Below, in pieces: positions 6,073-36,049 of a stretch of DNA of 64,000 bases. Origin of the DNA: Trichosphaerium sp. ATCC 40318. Taxonomy: Eukaryota; Protista; Tubulinea. How positions within the stretch are numbered: position 1 is the first letter of the stretch; each line of letters begins with the position of its first letter. The notes under the pieces are model-generated. The model did not search any database and was not told the DNA's origin. It worked only from the letters and a program-made list of their open reading frames with translations. Made by a program: the position numbers and the translations under genes. The stretch is taken from positions 248,001 through 312,000 of the forward strand of contig JALMLS010000376.1 of the NCBI GenBank assembly GCA_038496445.1. The letters run 5' to 3'.

Positions 6073-7830
6073 ATGTCACCTGTAAAAACTCTTATTTGCC
6101 TTGCTGCGATATTCATTACCAGCTGGGCATACAAAGTTAATTATGTAGATGGTTTAAAGATAACTTCGTTCGATGGCACTATTATAAGCGCAGATGCGGC
6201 TATCCCTATACCAGAAAAAGCGAATGAAACATTCCCTGTACTTATATTCGCTAACAGTTGGGGTATTCCTCAATTTGAGTACATCCAAAAAGGTACGACG
6301 CTGAGTGCGGTATAAATTTATAGTTGGCCAACTCAATGTTTTTCAAAAATTTACGGATAATTAGTTCTCGCGTGGGGCGAACAAGGATACATTATGCTTG
6401 AGTACGTGAAGTCTTTGAAGTCCTCCACATTTGTTTTAAAAGCCCACAAAGCACCCAAAAGGAGCAAACCTTTCAACACGTTTTTTTTAATTTCATAAAA
6501 CAGGTACGAGACACGTGGTTGGTATGATGAACAAGGCGATATTGATGTAGCAGGACCGAAGGACCAAAGAGATTTTAGCGCTGTTGTTGACTTCATTGTT
6601 AACCAAACGTCTTGGTATCCAGATACGAAGAACATAGCTGCGTGTGGTATCTCATACGGCGCTGGTATTTCTCTACTTGGCAGCGCACGTGACACACGCA
6701 TTAAAACAGCTGTCGCTATGAGTGGATGGGGTAATATGTACGACGCTCTAAACGGAGGAAACTCTCCTTCTTTAATTTGGGGTGATCTATTGGTTCTATT
6801 GGGGAAGATTGTTGGGAAAGTTCCTCAATCATTACTCACCCTACAAAAACAATTATTAGCAGGAAAGAACTTTACAGGCATAGAAGCATTCGCTAAAGTA
6901 CGTTCACCAATAGATGTTGTACAAAACATGAACGAAAGAAATCTTCCTGTTTTCGTTTCAAACAACTTTGAAGATCGTCTTTTTAAGCCCAACTATGCCC
7001 TTGATTTTTGGCAAGCAATAAAGGGCGAGAAGATGCTCTTACTAAATCAAGGGATCCACGCTACAGCAGAGTTAGGTGGGCTATTTGGGATTAAGGACAA
7101 CTACGTTTGGGAAAAGGTTAAACTTTGGGTTGATTACTGGCTTAAAGGCGAACAAAACGGCATACTCGATGAACCAAAGCTTCAATTTCAGCTAAGAAAT
7201 GACTTTAGTAAGCGTAGCTTTTTTAAAGAATGGCCACCTTCAAGTGCAATCAAAACTGAGTTTTACTTTTCTCCACGTGGGTACGACTTATTTGGTAAAC
7301 TATCAACATCAAAAACAATCTCAAAGACAGTTGATACTATCGGCAAGAGTGATCTTTCTGGTCTGAATGCTGGTGTACCAGTTATCGGCGAGATCTTTTC
7401 GGTATACGTCGATGTACCTATCCTCGCGGACTTGCCTCTCGTCTCACGTGAAGACGCTATTGTTTTTGCTAGCGAGACAATCAAATCGAGCGCAAGGATT
7501 TGCGGCACTCCAAACGTCACTATCTCTGTGAGCAGCAACCAAGACAAATATCAAGTTGTGGCTTACCTCTATAAAGTCGATTTTCTTGGTGTTGGTACGC
7601 TAATAGCACACGGTCCTTGGACACAGTGGAAAGGTCAAGTTGGTCGCGTTGATACAACTACAATCAGTATGAATGCAGTATGCGTTGATGCCGATGCTGG
7701 TGAATATTTCGCCGTTGGCATATCGTTGTTTGACGTTCTGTACCAACCAGCGAACTCTAACAGTGATCTTAAAGTATCTATTCATTATGATAACCCTCCA
7801 ATAGTACAAATACCTATTGTATCTACTTAA
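6073..7830 (+). CDS. Secreted CocE/NonD-family (peptidase S15) alpha/beta hydrolase
   Basis: Signal peptide MSPVKTLICLAAIFITSWA; motifs FANSWG, YETRGW, nucleophile elbow GISYGAG, NNFED and GIHATAE; C-terminal PepX_C-like beta domain; two introns near the 5' end. Confidence 0.9.
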
Positions 7831-26700: not shown

Positions 26701-27209
26701 TTAAGGTTGATATTCAACAGCGTCACCACCTTCATCCCATGTGTATGAATACACTTCAAAACTCAAACCTGCCAATGGGCCTTCGTGTAGCTTATTTCTT
26801 CGTTAACACAGTAAAATAGCGAATTATAGGTACCTCAATTGGTGTAGGGTCATCTCTGGCGTAGCAACAACCTCCTGGAGCGTGTGGAACAACTCTATTA
26901 AATATTAGACTGCGGTAATTATCGTTTAGAGTGCCTTGGTATTGGGTGAGCGCAAGCACTGATCCAATCTTCGCCCTCTTGATAATATTTTGCTATTATC
27001 TTTGGGTTAACTTCACGAGCTCGCTGGCGGAATACTGATTGCGCTTCTCTGAGTTTGAAAAATACATTGTGGTTAAAGACGTAGTGACTACGAATCTCAC
27101 GTAATATACGTCTATATTGTCTTGTTACTTTGTTTTTGTGCGTTAGACGCTTTGTTTCCTTTGGATAATTCCAAAGCATTCTGCGCAAACCAGCGTTACT
27201 TGTCCACAT
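26701..27209 (-). CDS. NDUFB9: NADH dehydrogenase (complex I) subunit B22/NDUFB9, LYR family
   Basis: HKNKVTRQYRRILRE (LYR-like), F-R motif, and spliced AHPIP..VVPHAPGGCCYAR matching the HPxP..PGGxxYxR signature. Confidence 0.8.
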
Positions 27210-27578
27210 AGTGCTTTCTCCCAATAACTACTGTGGTTGGATGATGTTGTCAAGGGTATTCCAGGCAGAAAATTGTTCGGAAGAAAAACAGTTTTATTTT
27301 CAGCAAAAGTTGTTTCAAATTATTGTTCTGTGGCTAATTAAGAAATCAACCACGTGCTTAGGCACTGTGATGTTCATCTGTTGTTAACAACGCGTCAGTT
27401 GATAGAATAGTACGTGAACAAGTGTGTTGCACAGTGGAAATACTAACAAATTTCTGTTCCCAACTGAAATCACTGAAATCTATTGCAAAAATATGGTCTT
27501 TTTGTCATTGAACCAACAAAGAAAGGCACGTCTCCATTATGAACATTTTATGTTTTGTCTAACTCGACAATAGGATCA

Positions 27579-29581
27579 ATGGCCGTCAATAACAATTCTT
27601 CACCATCAAACTGTACAAACTTGCATATTTTGCTTCTCGGTACGTTGTACATATCAAATGTCACTTCTAAATCACCTTTAAGGGCCTCCTGGGGTTGGAA
27701 AAGGCACTCAAGCAAAGAATTTTCAAGATTCTCTTAACGCCACCGTAATTTCAGTGGGAGAACTCCTTCGCGCTGAAAGAGCAAAAAAAACGCTACTAGG
27801 ACAATACATAAACAAAAACTTTACGTTGTCCAAGCTGAGAAAAATAGCTAGTGAGCTGCTGTATCGGGAAATGTCTAAGGCACCTCGAGACAAGCCAATA
27901 ATAGTCGAAAGTGGTGTGAAGACACTTCAAAACGCAAAACGAGTAAGCCTTTTTTTTCGTATTTCTTTCTTATGAATAAGTCTAACTGAGAATTTAGCTC
28001 GATATGGTGTTGGAGAGTTGTGGCTATGCTCTCGATCTTGTGTTCCACCTGAATACTTCAGAAGATCAAGTATTAGAACGATTAAAATCACGTGGACGGG
28101 AAGATAAAGTTTCACAAATCGGAGCGCGTTTGAGTTCGTATCACAAAAACAAAGAGCCTATCATATCATTTTACGAAGAAAAAGGAATACTTCATAACAT
28201 TGATGCGTCAGGATCTGTTGAGGAAGTTTTTAAAGCAATCACAACAAAGTGCAACGAACAAATGCCAAGTATCTTGAAAAGAAGATCTGAAGCTATCCCT
28301 CCCGCCAATCTACCTAAATTCTCGACTTGTGAACCTCTTGAAATGGATTACTTGAATTCATTTGCAGAGAGCGTAAATGGGTGTAAAGAAGCGGAGATTG
28401 TTGCTCAAGTTTGGCAACTATGTCAATGGAACAAGACTACTTTTCCTGGTACAAAGATTGTTCATCTACACCATGGAAATTCTAGAAGTATTAGCAACCC
28501 AAGATATACGTATATGGCAGCATTGAAACTGGATGGCGTGAGACACTTACTACTCATATCGCAAGGTACTTGAAAACAAAAGTTTTTTCTGTTTTTTTTT
28601 TTTTTTGCTGATGTTGTCTTACACTTTGACCTGCTTGATTTTCATAATGCTTACAGCCGTTTAGGTAATGTGTACCTTATCTCACGCAAATTATCAGTAA
28701 TGAAACTCAAGCTGGGACGTAAACTGGATAGTAGATACAACAATACACTTCTCGATGGAGAATTGATAAAAAATAGTGATGGTAGCGGTACATACATTGC
28801 ATTTGATGCCTTGTTTACGTATGGACGTTCTATAATGCGTAAAAACTTAAAAGATCGTATTTACGAAGCACAAGGGATCTTGCATGCGCTGAACCACCAC
28901 CAAAACACTTTGCCTTTATTCTTCGATTCACAGCGCTATGAACTTCTTACAAGTGTTCAAAATGTTCTGGAAGCAAGGACTAAGGCTAATTTGCCTACAG
29001 ATGGTATTGTGATAACGCCACGTGATACACAATATAGATGTGGGTTGAACCGTTATTCGTATAAATGGAAACCATTAATTGAATCAACTGTTGACTTTAA
29101 ACTCATGGCATGTGCTACTGGTGATGTCGAGCGATTTCGTTTATATACTGTGCATTATTCCAAAGGCTCTCATGAGTATTTACCTATTGAATGGATCACT
29201 GATGATGGGAGAGGACTAGAAACGCTCAAAGACAAAATCGTAGAGTGTTATTGGGATGAACAGTTCGAGGCTGAATATCCTCATGAACAAGGTGGTTGGG
29301 AGTTCCCAGTTAAGCGCAAAGGCGGTTGGAGGTACGTGGGTTATTTTATAAGGATTATTAAGTGTTAACGTCGGTATTTTAGGGTATCTCGAGTCCGTAT
29401 TGATAAAGAACAACCTAATGTAGATTGGGTAGTCAAGGATATGATGGTGTTACTTGACAAACCAATGACAGCAGCACAATTGATTGATGTAGCAAATTCC
29501 CTGAGAAGTGGAAGAAATGCAAGGAATACAAGACCACCTCCTAGAAGTAACAATAGAAGGCGTAATGGTAACTATAGATGA
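27579..29581 (+). CDS. Adenylate-kinase-like P-loop kinase fused to mRNA guanylyltransferase (TbCe1-like RNA kinase/capping enzyme)
   Basis: Spliced HILLLGPPGVGKGTQA...ISVGELLRAE. GTase motifs: I KLDGVR, III LLDGEL, IIIa FDAL, IV TDGIVITP, V KWKP, OB-fold IVECYW, VI RIDKEQPN. The kinase C-half and GTase motif I lie in one uninterrupted ORF (28004-28573). Confidence 0.92.
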
Positions 29582-29678
29582 TAATAAAAACTTTGCATCT
29601 TTTTTTCCATGTTGGTCTTATTTACAACAATTTTTCTTGAGAATGAGGTAAAGTGGTTTCATTTTACATTACAAATAT

Positions 29679-30916
29679 CTACTTTTTCTCAATAGACATA
29701 TCATCACGCCTCATTGCAACAGCTTTATCATGATCAAAATCACAAGTTTCAAGGTAATAAACTGCTTCTCCCTCTCCAACTAAAAAGACAATCAATAAAC
29801 AGTCGTACCAAACCTACAAGCCAATAAAAACACTAACCTTTCTCTGAACGCTGGAAATGAATTATCATCTTTTTCCGAAGCTTGAGTCTTTGTTCATCTA
29901 ACATTGACGAACCTATTACAGCAATTAACAGATTGAAAACGTGACCTGTTGTTGGTTACACATACTTGTCATTCCTTTTGGTATCTTCAACTCTATTAAC
30001 CCTCTTAAATCATGAGGAATCACTGTTGGTTTATTTGCATCTCTAATCCTAGCAACCTATTCACAAGTTAGACTACACATTGTAACGAAATCCATTAGCA
30101 TACAGAAACGTTATAACGCAACGAAAGTATAGACAGCGTTTCTGATAAAGCTACAGAATGAGTAATAAATCCCTGCTTCTCGTTGAACATTGGTAACTTT
30201 GTCTTAGACTTTTCCTAAAACTCAAGTATTACTTTCCTACCAACTGGAGATTACCTACCCGCTTTCCAAGTATGTCATCATTGGATAAGAGCTCTGGTGG
30301 TATTTCGAAGGAAGACACACCTGGCAATACTGTAGAGATATCTCCTGGGGTCCTACTCGAGGTATTGGGCTTGGGCGTTGCCGTCCGACCTTAAACGAAT
30401 ATCAGACAACTTGTAGTTATACTCGGTTATTATTTAATACCATGGGCTGCAACAAGTTGATCAAATACATGTAAGGCATCTTCTGTACTCTTGGAAGGCA
30501 CGTGACCGTTTGCAAACTTGCATCCTAGAACAGAGTCAAACCATTAAAAGTGAAAAGGACTTGTTTACCTTTTTCTTCTAGTGCCGCTTTACAACAAGTC
30601 CATGATGAGACCCTATCACCACCTCCAAGCTTTGTGGCGTAAGTCTAAAAACAAGTAAGGAATAAAACACCGAATTCCGTTTGGCTGTTGACATAAACGT
30701 GCCGAAATTGCATAGCGTCCTAGAAGTATTGTTAGGTAAGCTATCGTTGTACTGTGGTTAGTGTATACCTGGGTGATAATTACAACGCTCATTCGCCTCA
30801 AGTTTTGAATTGTAGAACTTATTACAGTTTTTACATTGCTTGGTATCGCTGATTGGAACGTTTGGTAGAATTTGCTTCAATTCTAGGCTATTTGGATCAA
30901 CAATAAGTCTAGCCAT
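29679..30916 (-). CDS. Cys/His zinc-binding domain + LysM + UBA-like protein
   Basis: Zinc module CKNC..CNYHPG..WTCC..GC..H; spliced LysM HSVALSETLSILSLRYNVSVARIRDAN..LIELKIP; C-terminal EAVYYLETCDFDHDKAV. Confidence 0.72.
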
Positions 30917-34831: not shown

Positions 34832-36049
34832 TTAAACAAAGAATCCACGTGTTGAATGCTCTGGAGCCTTCTCCTTTGTAATGATTTCTTCTGTAGCTCC
34901 AATAATCTTTACACCGACACTTTGTGCAACCTTTGTTTTCAACAATTACTAATCAAAGTGACACTTGCTAACTTACTTGTAATACTTCCTTCAATTGAAC
35001 CAATGACAAGGATCCATACCCTTTCTCTATACCACAAATATCTCCAGCTTTATTTACAGTCACCGAAACGCGAGCAGTCATACACGCCTTCATAGAAAAA
35101 AGGTTATCGAAATTATAATTTAACAATGTGAAGCGTACCTCTTCTTCGGGTGTTGTGTCAACCACGTGAAAATTACCAATGCGTGTAAATGTTACCGCTA
35201 TAGGGACTTTAGATACATCTATGTTTATAATATCTTCAGGATCATCACTTGGTTGAAGATCATAATCATCAGGTTTATCTCCTGCAATTACTGTCACCTA
35301 TTAAAAAAAACAATTTAAGAAATAATACATTAATTAATTAGATTACCTCAGGGATCGTTGTTGTAGCCAATGCTGCTCGTGTAGCTATACCAACAGCATC
35401 TGTAAGATTACCAGCTTCGTTTAAAACGATAATATCTACGTATAGCGCCCAACAAAACAAGCCTTTAATTTTTGTTATTGTTAAATGACATTTTGTGCTT
35501 GTCACGCACCTTCTCTCAAGCACAACGACTTTGTATCAACGTAAGATACTACATTTTGCATGGCCTATTACGTCAGGGATTGTTGCAGTGTAAATACGGT
35601 GAACGTACACGAGTAACATACATTCGCGTCTGATCTTTGTCATCTTCGCTTCCCCACCTGTCTATGTGAACCTTGTTGGCTTTAGTAGTGAAATGTATTA
35701 TTTTATGTAAATACCTTCACAATGCCCTCACTAGGCCTCGTTGGATCTGGTGCCTCTACTTCTGCTTTGATTCCTACTAGTACAGATGTTGCGTCCAGAA
35801 CTACTCTAAAAAGCATTAACGTTACTCGCATTATACTAAATACGCGATTTCTACCTTGCTGAACCATTTGCTTGAGAAATAATTCCAGTTTCGAGAGTAA
35901 AGGGCCTATAATCGATACGACTACGCCCGTCGTTTCTAATATCCTCAGCTACGCCCTCTTGAATGAATCTATGGCATAAATTGAATTTTAGAGATTAACT
36001 GTCGCTCTTACTGCTTTTCTATGCTTGAAAGTAGCGTTGTGGCTAGCAT
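34832..36049 (-). CDS. RRP42: Exosome complex component RRP42 (RNase PH family)
   Basis: FIQEGVAEDIRNDGRSRIDYR, QANGSA, SVLVGIKAEV, CWALYVDIIVLNEAGNLTDA and VVDTTPEEE. Confidence 0.88.

What the first reader, a model, noticed from the sequence alone, without database searches (positions are those of the whole stretch)
27579..29581. Adenylate-kinase-like domain fused to a capping guanylyltransferase: candidate cytoplasmic mRNA recapping enzyme outside kinetoplastids
Seen in the sequence: an intact Walker A (GPPGVGKGT) NMP-kinase fold joined to a GTase with all six nucleotidyltransferase motifs plus the OB fold. The junction lies within one exon, so it is not a gene-model artefact. The AMP-binding signatures of true adenylate kinases are degenerate (IIVESGVKT where DGFPR is expected, and no G.LVP motif), which suggests a different phosphate acceptor. 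Established: nuclear capping GTases are standalone or fused to a triphosphatase or methyltransferase, whereas Trypanosoma TbCe1 is a P-loop kinase-GTase fusion that converts 5'-monophosphate RNA to ppRNA and recaps it. Inference: this non-kinetoplastid protist has a single-polypeptide recapping pathway for decapped or cleaved RNAs, by shared ancestry, transfer or convergent fusion.
Basis: partly seen in the sequence, partly recalled or inferred. Interest (0 to 1): 0.85.

Follow-up and report, generated by a model that had tools for sequence, protein, structure and literature searches.

The report
Adenylate-kinase-like domain fused to capping enzyme
An amoeba-like protist expresses one spliced gene that joins a remodelled adenylate-kinase domain to an intact mRNA-capping guanylyltransferase; it belongs to an undescribed family shared by Amoebozoa and giant viruses and has the layout of the trypanosome enzyme that re-caps decapped mRNAs, although that activity is untested here.

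Summary
A five-exon gene (27579-29581, +; 584 aa) encodes an N-terminal adenylate-kinase (ADK)-fold domain and a C-terminal capping guanylyltransferase (GTase) with OB domain. Public transcript contigs show all four introns spliced out. The domain junction lies inside exon 3.

- **GTase:** all catalytic motifs are present.
- **Kinase:** the P-loop, catalytic acid and LID arginines are kept. The AMP-acceptor lobe is remodelled.
- **Not a one-off:** about 28 of the 150 closest GTase clusters are the same kind of fusion. Their GTases form one clade (SH-aLRT 97).
- **Two branches (100/100):** a cellular branch holds the window's protein plus three amoebozoan transcriptomes and an intron-split copy in an AT-rich eukaryotic genome. 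A second branch lies on giant-virus contigs.
- **Literature:** the held papers mention kinase-GTase fusions only in kinetoplastids (TbCe1).

The best-supported mechanism is ATP-dependent conversion of 5'-monophosphate RNA to diphosphate RNA, followed by GMP transfer. This is inferred from architecture and residue pattern, not shown. I could not obtain the TbCe1 sequence, so homology of the two kinase domains is untested.

An unchecked scan note reports a separate triphosphatase-GTase gene elsewhere in this genome. If true, this is not the only GTase. I rate it a new variant of a known kind, interest 0.65.

The parts
27579..27639 (+). Exon 1: start codon and N-terminal 20 residues up to the first strand of the kinase fold
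   Evidence: Frame and GT donor. Junction 27638/27682 seen in contigs of X1 and X2.
27683..27942 (+). Exon 2: Walker A P-loop (27685-27708), remodelled NMP-acceptor lobe (about 27796-27846) and IIVESGVKT in place of DGFPRT (27898-27924)
   Evidence: Pfam ADK 4e-10 and AAA_17 7e-10. The PDB ADK alignment stops after about 45 residues of this exon. Residue table.
27998..28565 (+). Exon 3: kinase C-terminal half with short LID arginines (28079-28129), linker with the IPP motif, and GTase N-terminus with motif I KLDGVR (28526-28543, K284)
   Evidence: Pfam ADK 1e-7 on residues 1-63 of the exon. AK1 match 1.7e-9 and a weak Mce1 match at the exon's end. One exon spans the domain junction. Contigs overlap across it.
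28665..29331 (+). Exon 4: GTase nucleotidyltransferase core with motifs III (28748-28762), IIIa, IV (29000-29020) and V (29060-29074), plus the first part of the OB domain
   Evidence: Pfam mRNA_cap_enzyme 1.6e-8. Candida Cgt1 1p16 4e-9. 443 library hits.
29383..29581 (+). Exon 5: end of the OB domain with motif VI RVRIDK (29390-29407), arginine-rich C-terminal tail (about 29504-29578) and stop codon
   Evidence: Frame. Junction 29329/29381 seen in four runs. Weak mRNA_cap_C hit on profile positions 83-115.
27640..27682 (+). Intron 1 (43 nt, GT..AG)
   Evidence: Skipped in contigs of X1 and X2.
27943..27997 (+). Intron 2 (55 nt, GT..AG)
   Evidence: Skipped in contigs of X1 and X2.
28566..28664 (+). 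Intron 3 (99 nt, GT..AG)
   Evidence: Skipped in contigs of X1 and X2.
29332..29382 (+). Intron 4 (51 nt, GT..AG)
   Evidence: Skipped in contigs of X1, X2, X3 and X8.

Best explanation
The gene encodes a bifunctional RNA 5'-end enzyme.

- **Kinase step (inferred):** the N-terminal domain is an adenylate-kinase fold whose ATP site and phosphoryl-transfer residues are kept. Its nucleotide-acceptor lobe has been rebuilt. The proposal is that it uses ATP to phosphorylate a 5'-monophosphate RNA end to a 5'-diphosphate.
- **GTase step (inferred from intact motifs):** the C-terminal guanylyltransferase forms a covalent K284-GMP intermediate. It then transfers GMP to that diphosphate end to give GpppRNA.
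- **Role:** one polypeptide could therefore cap, or re-cap, RNAs that lack a triphosphate end, such as decapped or cleaved RNAs. This is what trypanosome TbCe1 has been shown to do.

Shown here: the gene structure, its expression as one spliced message, the domain identities, the residue pattern, and membership of a fusion family shared by Amoebozoa and giant viruses.

Inferred: both enzymatic activities, the RNA acceptor, and the cellular role.
For: - **Single expressed frame:** gene model and spliced contigs.
- **GTase:** every catalytic residue is present. These residues are nearly invariant across 25 fusions: K284, D286, G287, R289, D327-G-E329, D344, D409-G410, K430, K432, R524, D526, K527.
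- **Kinase, donor side kept:** P-loop K27, R50 (E. coli R36), E96 (D84), R135, R139, R141, E142/D143 and R151.
- **Kinase, acceptor side changed:** the ADK Gln that reads the AMP adenine (Q92) is N104 here and is never Gln in the 10 cellular fusions. R88 is Lys here and in 6 of those 10. The G-x-LVPD lobe is replaced by a family signature, [YF]xxxN[WF]. Keeping the donor side while rebuilding the acceptor side is what a change of phosphate acceptor predicts.
- **Long-lived fusion:** about 28 of the 150 nearest GTase clusters carry the same N-terminal domain. Their GTases form one clade (SH-aLRT 97). This points to selection on the combination.
- **Match to TbCe1:** TbCe1 has the same order of domains and was shown to convert pRNA to ppRNA to GpppRNA. 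Its GTase lysine is K288 (PMC11417388).
- **Lead to kinetoplastids:** the nearest named ESM-Atlas cluster of family member P0004 is a Euglenozoan 'RNA guanylyltransferase' cluster. It carries PF01331 plus AAA_17, with score 0.93 and 178 of 256 shared features.
- **Model of P0004:** the AlphaFold2 model has both domains well folded, with pLDDT 84.5 and pTM 0.79. The kinase part superposes on ADKs (TM about 0.8) and the GTase part on Pce1, Cgt1, human and PBCV-1 GTases.
Against: - No activity was measured.
- The window's kinase departs from its own family at three otherwise conserved positions: S97 for Gly, V99 for Pro and K100 for Arg. It could be weak or inactive.
- Some relatives in the same GTase clade have long N-terminal regions with no detectable kinase or Walker A (P0008, P0029). 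The kinase is therefore dispensable in some lineages.
- In giant viruses the fusion may simply be the virus's capping GTase, with the kinase serving another purpose.
- Only five polymorphisms were seen, 2 synonymous and 3 not. That is too few to show constraint.
- Localisation is unknown. The arginine-rich tail could even be a nuclear signal.
Confidence: 0.5

Rival explanations
1. It is a conventional capping GTase acting on diphosphate ends made by a separate triphosphatase. The attached ADK-like domain is a true nucleotide kinase or a nucleotide-sensing module, for example local NMP/NDP turnover or ATP-dependent regulation, and is not an RNA kinase.
For: - The domain scores as ADK in Pfam and PDB searches.
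- The viral branch largely keeps DGFPRT, and about half of its members keep the Gln equivalent to Q92.
- On giant-virus contigs the fusion is the gene that Pfam marks as the capping enzyme.
Against: - In the window's protein and its cellular relatives, the AMP-recognition elements are lost while the catalytic residues stay. The lost elements are Q92, the G-x-LVPD lobe and DGFPR.
- The only biochemically studied kinase-GTase fusion is an RNA kinase (PMC11417388).
- An unchecked note reports a separate triphosphatase-GTase gene in this genome. That would leave the primary capping role already filled.
Confidence: 0.25
2. The kinase domain of this particular protein is a catalytically dead remnant. 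Only the GTase works, and the N-terminal domain serves as a scaffold or RNA- or protein-binding module.
For: - S97, V99 and K100 replace Gly, Pro and Arg, which are conserved in most relatives and in all ADKs.
- The window's protein also lacks the long LID that its nearest amoebozoan relatives have.
- Some clade members lack a recognisable kinase altogether.
Against: - P-loop Lys, R50, the acidic residue at D84, all four LID or core arginines and the ED pair are retained.
- Lys at the R88 position is shared by 6 of 10 cellular members, so it is a lineage trait and not random decay.
- The short LID is the normal state of AK1-type kinases and of the viral branch.
Confidence: 0.15
3. The gene is a recently integrated giant-virus gene, part of an endogenous viral element, with no host function.
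For: - A sister branch of the family sits on giant-virus contigs with NCLDV capsid and PolB genes, and in a GVMAG.
Against: - The gene has four spliceosomal introns and is expressed in four studies.
- Its GC content matches its surroundings.
- The identifiable neighbours look cellular: a weak LYR-family match and an RNase PH domain.
- The full-length tree puts it with amoebozoan transcripts, apart from the viral branch, at 100/100.
Confidence: 0.05
4. The fusion is a gene-model or assembly artefact, and two adjacent genes were read as one.
For: None found.
Against: - One exon (27998-28565) encodes the end of the kinase, the linker and GTase motif I in one open frame.
- Overlapping transcript contigs cross it.
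- The same architecture occurs in uninterrupted ORFs of many unrelated contigs and transcriptomes.
Confidence: 0.01

Closest known systems
Trypanosoma brucei TbCe1, the cytoplasmic bifunctional RNA 5'-kinase / guanylyltransferase (recapping enzyme)
   Same: - N-terminal Walker A P-loop domain followed by a capping GTase in one polypeptide.
- The GTase lysine is at almost the same distance from the N-terminus: K284 here, K288 in TbCe1 (PMC11417388).
- A Euglenozoan GTase cluster with an AAA_17 P-loop domain is the nearest named Atlas cluster of family member P0004.
   Different: - The host lineage is amoeba-like, with cis-spliced introns.
- The kinase here is clearly ADK-derived, and whether TbCe1's is could not be tested.
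- TbCe1 is tuned to hypermethylated cap-4 ends, which are not known outside kinetoplastids.
- Activity and localisation are unknown here.
Short-type adenylate kinases / UMP-CMP kinases (AK1, Pfam PF00406)
   Same: - Fold, P-loop, catalytic Arg and Asp set, and short LID.
- Best PDB matches are AK1 at 1.7e-9 for the C-terminal half and yeast Adk1 at 3.7e-6 for the N-terminal part.
   Different: - The acceptor lobe is rebuilt: no G-x-LVPD, ESGVK for DGFPR, and Asn for the adenine-reading Gln.
- The domain is fused to a GTase.
Fungal-type and Chlorella-virus-type capping guanylyltransferases (Cgt1/Ceg1/Pce1, PBCV-1 A103R; PF01331 + PF03919)
   Same: - All six nucleotidyltransferase motifs and the OB domain.
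- Best solved relatives are 1p16, 3kyh, 4pz6 and 1ckm.
   Different: - Those enzymes are standalone or partner with a triphosphatase.
- Here the GTase belongs to a separate clade in which an ADK-like domain is attached.
Uncharacterised ADK-GTase fusions in Amoebozoa (Cavostelium, Soliformovum, Dracoamoeba) and in giant-virus metagenome contigs
   Same: - Same two domains in the same order.
- Shared [YF]xxxN[WF] kinase signature and shared GTase clade.
   Different: - At most about 29-37% identical.
- The amoebozoan relatives carry the long ADK LID, which the window's protein lacks.
- The viral branch keeps DGFPRT.
- Databases call them only 'adenylate kinase (family enzyme)' or leave them unnamed.

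Membership tests
mRNA capping guanylyltransferase (covalent nucleotidyltransferase superfamily) | Motif I KxDGxR with the nucleophilic lysine | tested here: met
   KLDGVR at 284-289. The column is invariant or nearly so in 25 fusions.
mRNA capping guanylyltransferase (covalent nucleotidyltransferase superfamily) | Motifs III, IIIa, IV, V and VI | tested here: met
   LLDGE 325, YIAFD 340, DGIVITP 409, YKWKP 429, RVRIDK 522. Pfam PF01331 1.6e-8.
mRNA capping guanylyltransferase (covalent nucleotidyltransferase superfamily) | C-terminal OB-fold domain | tested here: met
   The exon pieces give only weak PF03919 hits (0.016 and 0.15). The family GTase+OB profile covers residues 240-580, and relatives score PF03919 down to 1e-13.
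mRNA capping guanylyltransferase (covalent nucleotidyltransferase superfamily) | Formation of a covalent enzyme-GMP intermediate | not testable with these tools
   Needs a [alpha-32P]GTP labelling assay.
Adenylate kinase (PF00406) as an AMP kinase | P-loop, catalytic arginines and the Asp pair of the ATP/LID side | tested here: met
   K27, R50, R135, R139, R141, E142/D143 and R151. Pfam ADK is above its cut-off on both exon pieces.
Adenylate kinase (PF00406) as an AMP kinase | AMP-binding signatures: G-x-LVPD lobe, DGFPR(T), and the adenine-reading Gln (E. coli Q92) | tested here: not met
   There is no LVPD lobe. ESGVKT stands for DGFPRT, and N104 stands for Gln. It is therefore an ADK-fold domain but should not be filed as an adenylate kinase.
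TbCe1-type bifunctional RNA kinase / GTase | Walker A P-loop domain N-terminal to a capping GTase in one polypeptide, with similar spacing | tested here: met
   Gene model and transcripts. K284 here against K288 in TbCe1 (PMC11417388).
TbCe1-type bifunctional RNA kinase / GTase | Sequence homology of the kinase domain and GTase to TbCe1 and its kinetoplastid orthologues | not testable with these tools
   No TbCe1 sequence could be fetched and none was named among the hits. The only evidence is a lead: a Euglenozoan PF01331 + AAA_17 cluster is the nearest named Atlas cluster of P0004.
TbCe1-type bifunctional RNA kinase / GTase | ATP-dependent pRNA to ppRNA kinase activity that depends on Walker A | not testable with these tools
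   Needs biochemistry.
TbCe1-type bifunctional RNA kinase / GTase | Cytoplasmic location and coexistence with a separate nuclear capping enzyme | not tested
   Only the window is readable. An unchecked first-reader note (s1-393575) reports a TTM triphosphatase-GTase gene elsewhere in this genome.
ADK-GTase fusion family of Amoebozoa and giant viruses (unnamed) | GTase falls in the fusion clade and the whole protein falls in its cellular branch | tested here: met
   A clade of 42 rows with all 28 fusions has SH-aLRT 97. The cellular and viral branches split at 100/100, with the window on the cellular side.
ADK-GTase fusion family of Amoebozoa and giant viruses (unnamed) | Kinase domain homologous to that of the other fusions, with the [YF]xxxN[WF] signature | tested here: met
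   phmmer of the window's residues 1-200 gives 1.8e-22 to P0004 and 4.7e-21 to P0018. Y62, N66 and F67 are present.

The most novel reading that the evidence does not exclude
ADK-derived RNA 5'-monophosphate kinase-GTase fusions are an old, widespread class of single-polypeptide (re)capping enzymes. They would be shared by Amoebozoa, giant viruses and, as TbCe1, Euglenozoa.

- Giant viruses would use them to cap or re-cap RNAs that lack a triphosphate end.
- The remodelled ADK fold would identify the kind of protein to look for as the unidentified 5'-monophosphate RNA kinase of the mammalian cytoplasmic capping complex.
Probability: 0.35. Interest if true: 0.8.

Novelty: new variant of a known kind. 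Interest (0 to 1): 0.65.

Why it matters
Cytoplasmic recapping is biochemically defined as a single polypeptide only in trypanosomes. In mammals the 5'-monophosphate RNA kinase of the capping complex is described only as an activity (PMC4138027 and PMC5737702 abstracts). That no protein has been assigned to it is my own recollection, not checked here.

A well-sampled family of kinase-GTase fusions in free-living amoebae and giant viruses would matter in three ways:
- It would show that one-protein capping of monophosphate RNA ends is not a kinetoplastid oddity.
- It would give many natural sequence variants for biochemistry. The donor site is kept and the acceptor lobe is rebuilt.
- It would raise the question of why giant viruses carry such an enzyme. 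Possibilities are capping of processed transcripts or reversal of decapping.

It also corrects database names, since these proteins are currently labelled adenylate kinases.

Tried and rejected
- **Word-indexed homologue search with exon 3:** it found nothing in its length range.
- **Searches with P0004 and with the 22-member alignment:** they returned few members and no kinetoplastid protein. TbCe1 could not be compared.
- **Papers not held:** the two papers most likely to describe the TbCe1 N-terminal domain (PMC4460440, PMC109047) and a recapping review (PMC6294674) are not in the library.
- **Viral-contig scans:** scans with exon 4 and with P0055 alone found nothing, and the 22-member alignment was too diverse to seed a scan. 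An 11-member viral alignment then found six loci.
- **Atlas feature searches with the window's exons:** they gave nothing (exon 3) or only generic GTase clusters (exon 4).
- **Atlas shape search with the P0004 model:** it did not list the Euglenozoan cluster.
- **Kinase-domain tree:** it did not resolve whether all fusions share one kinase origin.
- **Intron positions:** they are not shared with the intron-split copy in L005, so they give no evidence of common descent.
- **Whole spliced protein:** it has no reference form, so it was not sent to the fold, homologue or cluster tools. It was used only in local scripts.
- **Rejected readings:** gene-model artefact and recent viral insertion.
Full report
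**1. What is in the sequence**

The region 27579-29581 on the + strand holds a five-exon gene.
- The exons are 27579-27639, 27683-27942, 27998-28565, 28665-29331 and 29383-29581.
- The introns are 43, 55, 99 and 51 nt long, and all are GT..AG.
- Spliced, they give an uninterrupted 584-residue frame.

Domain hits on the separate exons:
- Pfam ADK (PF00406) matches exon 2 at 4e-10 and the first 63 residues of exon 3 at 1e-7.
- mRNA_cap_enzyme (PF01331) matches exon 4 at 1.6e-8.
- The two halves of mRNA_cap_C match weakly on exons 4 and 5.

Against solved structures:
- The GTase core is closest to Candida Cgt1 (1p16, 4e-9), then to yeast Ceg1, S. pombe Pce1 and Chlorella virus A103R.
- The kinase C-terminal half is closest to short-type AK1 (3adk, 1.7e-9).
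- The kinase N-terminal part matches yeast Adk1, but the alignment stops after about 45 residues, where the AMP-binding lobe begins.

Motif positions are given: Walker A at 21-29; GTase motifs I (K284), III, IIIa, IV, V and VI.

Exon 3 alone carries the end of the kinase, the linker and GTase motif I. The fusion therefore does not depend on any splice prediction.

**2. Expression**

Contigs from four public runs belonging to four studies were laid on 27200-29900.
- All four introns are precisely removed in X1 and X2. Intron 4 is also removed in X3 and X8.
- Overlapping contigs run from 27572 to about 29533.
- The only break, at 28267-28296, coincides with two polymorphisms that split the assembly graph into two 90-nt alleles. 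Both alleles overlap both flanks. X2 record 7 (28174-28326) also bridges the kinase end and the linker.
- The downstream convergent gene is spliced too (29780-29837).

The runs are not recorded as RNA. However, intron-less junctions in two neighbouring genes show that they are transcript-derived. The "two separate transcripts" outcome that would have refuted the finding is not seen.

**3. It is one member of a family**

A full HMMER search with exon 4 against 1.84 billion cluster representatives gave 443 hits at E <= 1e-3. The best is only 37% identical.

About 28 of the 150 listed hits carry an N-terminal domain homologous to the window's kinase.
- Local phmmer and HMM searches show this, for example P0004 at 1.8e-22 and P0018 at 4.7e-21.
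- Pfam confirms ADK + mRNA_cap_enzyme + mRNA_cap_C on those tested.

Named members are all Amoebozoa from EukProt:
- Cavostelium apophysatum (P0004).
- Soliformovum irregulare (P0006).
- Dracoamoeba jomungandri (P0151, the MMETSP "Stereomyxa" sample).

A further copy, split by an intron, lies on a 2.66-Mb contig of 27.5% GC. Its neighbours are RasGEF, LRR and protein-kinase genes.

A second group lies on metagenome contigs that are clearly giant-virus:
- P0102 sits on a 91-kb contig with NCLDV major capsid protein, family-B DNA polymerase and YqaJ.
- P0055 sits on a 56-kb contig of densely packed genes.
- A full-length copy occurs in the IMG/VR giant-virus bin GVMAG-M-3300024510-1.

**4. Trees**

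*GTase tree.* In a tree of 149 GTase domains, all fusions plus the window's protein fall in one clade of 42 rows (SH-aLRT 97). This clade is apart from two other groups. One is the long GTases, several of which carry the cap-methyltransferase domain PF03291 in precomputed Pfam hits. The other is the short standalone GTases.

*Full-length tree.* A careful tree of 25 fusions splits them 100/100.
- The cellular branch has 10 rows: the window, the three amoebozoan species and metatranscriptome sequences.
- The viral branch has 15 rows.

*What follows.*
- The window's gene is a cellular member and not a recent viral insert. This agrees with its introns, its GC content and its neighbours. Those neighbours are a divergent ORF with a weak LYR-family match and an RNase PH domain further on.
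- In the rooted-by-outgroup GTase tree the viral branch appears nested among cellular rows, but support there is weak. The direction of transfer is open.
- The kinase-only tree leaves the cellular fusions unresolved between the viral fusions (99/99) and canonical ADKs (98/94). A single origin of the kinase is neither shown nor excluded.

**5. Residue pattern of the kinase**

*Kept in the window's protein and almost throughout the family:*
- P-loop Lys (K27).
- The Arg that binds the acceptor phosphate (R50; E. coli R36).
- The acidic residue at D84 (E96).
- R135, R139, R141, the E142/D143 pair and R151. These correspond to E. coli R119, R123, R156, D158/D159 and R167.

*Changed:*
- The G-x-LVPD lobe is replaced by a family-specific [YF]xxxN[WF] stretch (Y62, N66, F67 here).
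- The Gln that reads the adenine of AMP is Gln in every ADK in the alignment. It is N104 here and is never Gln in the 10 cellular fusions.
- R88 is Lys here and in 6 of those 10.

*Odd even within the family:*
- S97 stands for Gly and V99 for Pro.
- The protein lacks the long LID insert that its amoebozoan relatives have. In this it resembles AK1 and the viral branch.

The simplest reading is a phosphotransferase that still uses ATP but no longer recognises AMP. An impaired kinase cannot be excluded for this particular protein.

**6. Structure of a relative**

The whole spliced protein has no reference form, so it could not be submitted.
- The closest full-length relative, P0004, was folded from the 22-member alignment. 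The model has mean pLDDT 84.5 and pTM 0.79.
- Foldseek matched its C-terminal part to Pce1, Cgt1, human and PBCV-1 GTases at E about 1e-25.
- Foldseek matched its N-terminal part to adenylate kinases at target TM about 0.8.

**7. Relation to what is known**

TbCe1 of Trypanosoma brucei is a cytoplasmic enzyme. Its RNA kinase activity converts pRNA to ppRNA, and its GTase (K288) then forms GpppRNA (PMC11417388).

Kinetoplastids also have a second protein of similar build, G5-IP (PMC5750579, PMC10810786).

Full-text searches found no paper that links a capping enzyme with an adenylate kinase domain. None places recapping in Amoebozoa or giant viruses either. A 2025 paper states that no TbCe1 homologue could be identified in Toxoplasma.

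The nearest named ESM-Atlas cluster of P0004 is a Euglenozoan "RNA guanylyltransferase" cluster. It carries PF01331 plus the P-loop model AAA_17, with score 0.93 and 178 of 256 shared features. This is a lead that TbCe1-type proteins are kin of this family.

No TbCe1 sequence could be obtained, so that homology was not tested.

**8. Is it the only GTase?**

Only the window can be read. A first-reader note of this scan (s1-393575, unchecked) reports a TTM (Cet1-type) triphosphatase fused to a GTase in a spliced gene on another piece of the same genome. If that note is right, the primary capping role is already filled. The kinase-GTase would then be an additional enzyme, as in trypanosomes. This was not verified here.

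**9. Verdict**

- The new information is that this is a widespread, unnamed family of Amoebozoa and giant viruses. Databases label its members as adenylate kinases.
- I rate it a new variant of a known kind, with moderate to high interest.

Noticed in passing
L001 (NCBI GCA_022599615.1 contig, 91 kb), L004, L008, L010 (IMG/VR GVMAG-M-3300024510-1): Giant-virus contigs carry an uninterrupted ADK-like-GTase fusion gene next to NCLDV capsid, PolB and YqaJ genes. This capping-enzyme type appears undescribed in giant viruses in the papers searched.
   Followed up: partly
L009 (ENA contig of 46.7 kb) and proteins P0157/P0161: A more divergent P-loop-GTase fusion has Walker A GPAGCGKT, KADGVR at about 260 and only a marginal Pfam ADK hit. 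It lies outside the main fusion clade, on contigs with sparse genes all on one strand. Its organism is unknown.
   Followed up: partly
proteins P0008 and P0029 (metatranscriptome contigs): These members of the fusion GTase clade have N-terminal regions of 270-330 residues with no Walker A and no detectable kinase similarity. The kinase may have decayed or been replaced.
   Followed up: no
window 27514-27578: One X2 contig carries nine letters before 27572 that match 27514-27522. This hints at a 5'-UTR intron of about 49 nt with a non-GT donor. The evidence is a single short loose end.
   Followed up: no
window 29646-29900 (- strand): A convergent downstream gene has an intron at 29780-29837 (CT..AC on the + strand) that is removed in three runs. 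Its transcript contig ends about 65 nt from the stop codon of the fusion gene.
   Followed up: no
window 26919-27224 (- strand): A divergently oriented ORF 355 nt upstream has a weak Complex1_LYR match (E 0.006).
   Followed up: no
window 34968-35297 (- strand) and 6718-7830 (+): One ORF has an RNase PH C-terminal domain (8e-9), probably an exosome subunit exon. Another has X-Pro dipeptidyl-peptidase domains (PepX_C 5e-12).
   Followed up: no
runs X1, X2/X3 and X8: Transcript contigs 99% or more identical to this gene are filed under three different coded organism names in four studies, and a marine metagenome holds part of it. The labels may be synonyms, or the organism may travel with others.
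   Followed up: no
window 28267, 28296, 29146, 29474, 29487: Five differences between the runs and the window: 2 synonymous and 3 not (I207T in the linker IPP motif, A550S and D554G in the tail). The last two lie near a contig end and may be errors.
   Followed up: partly
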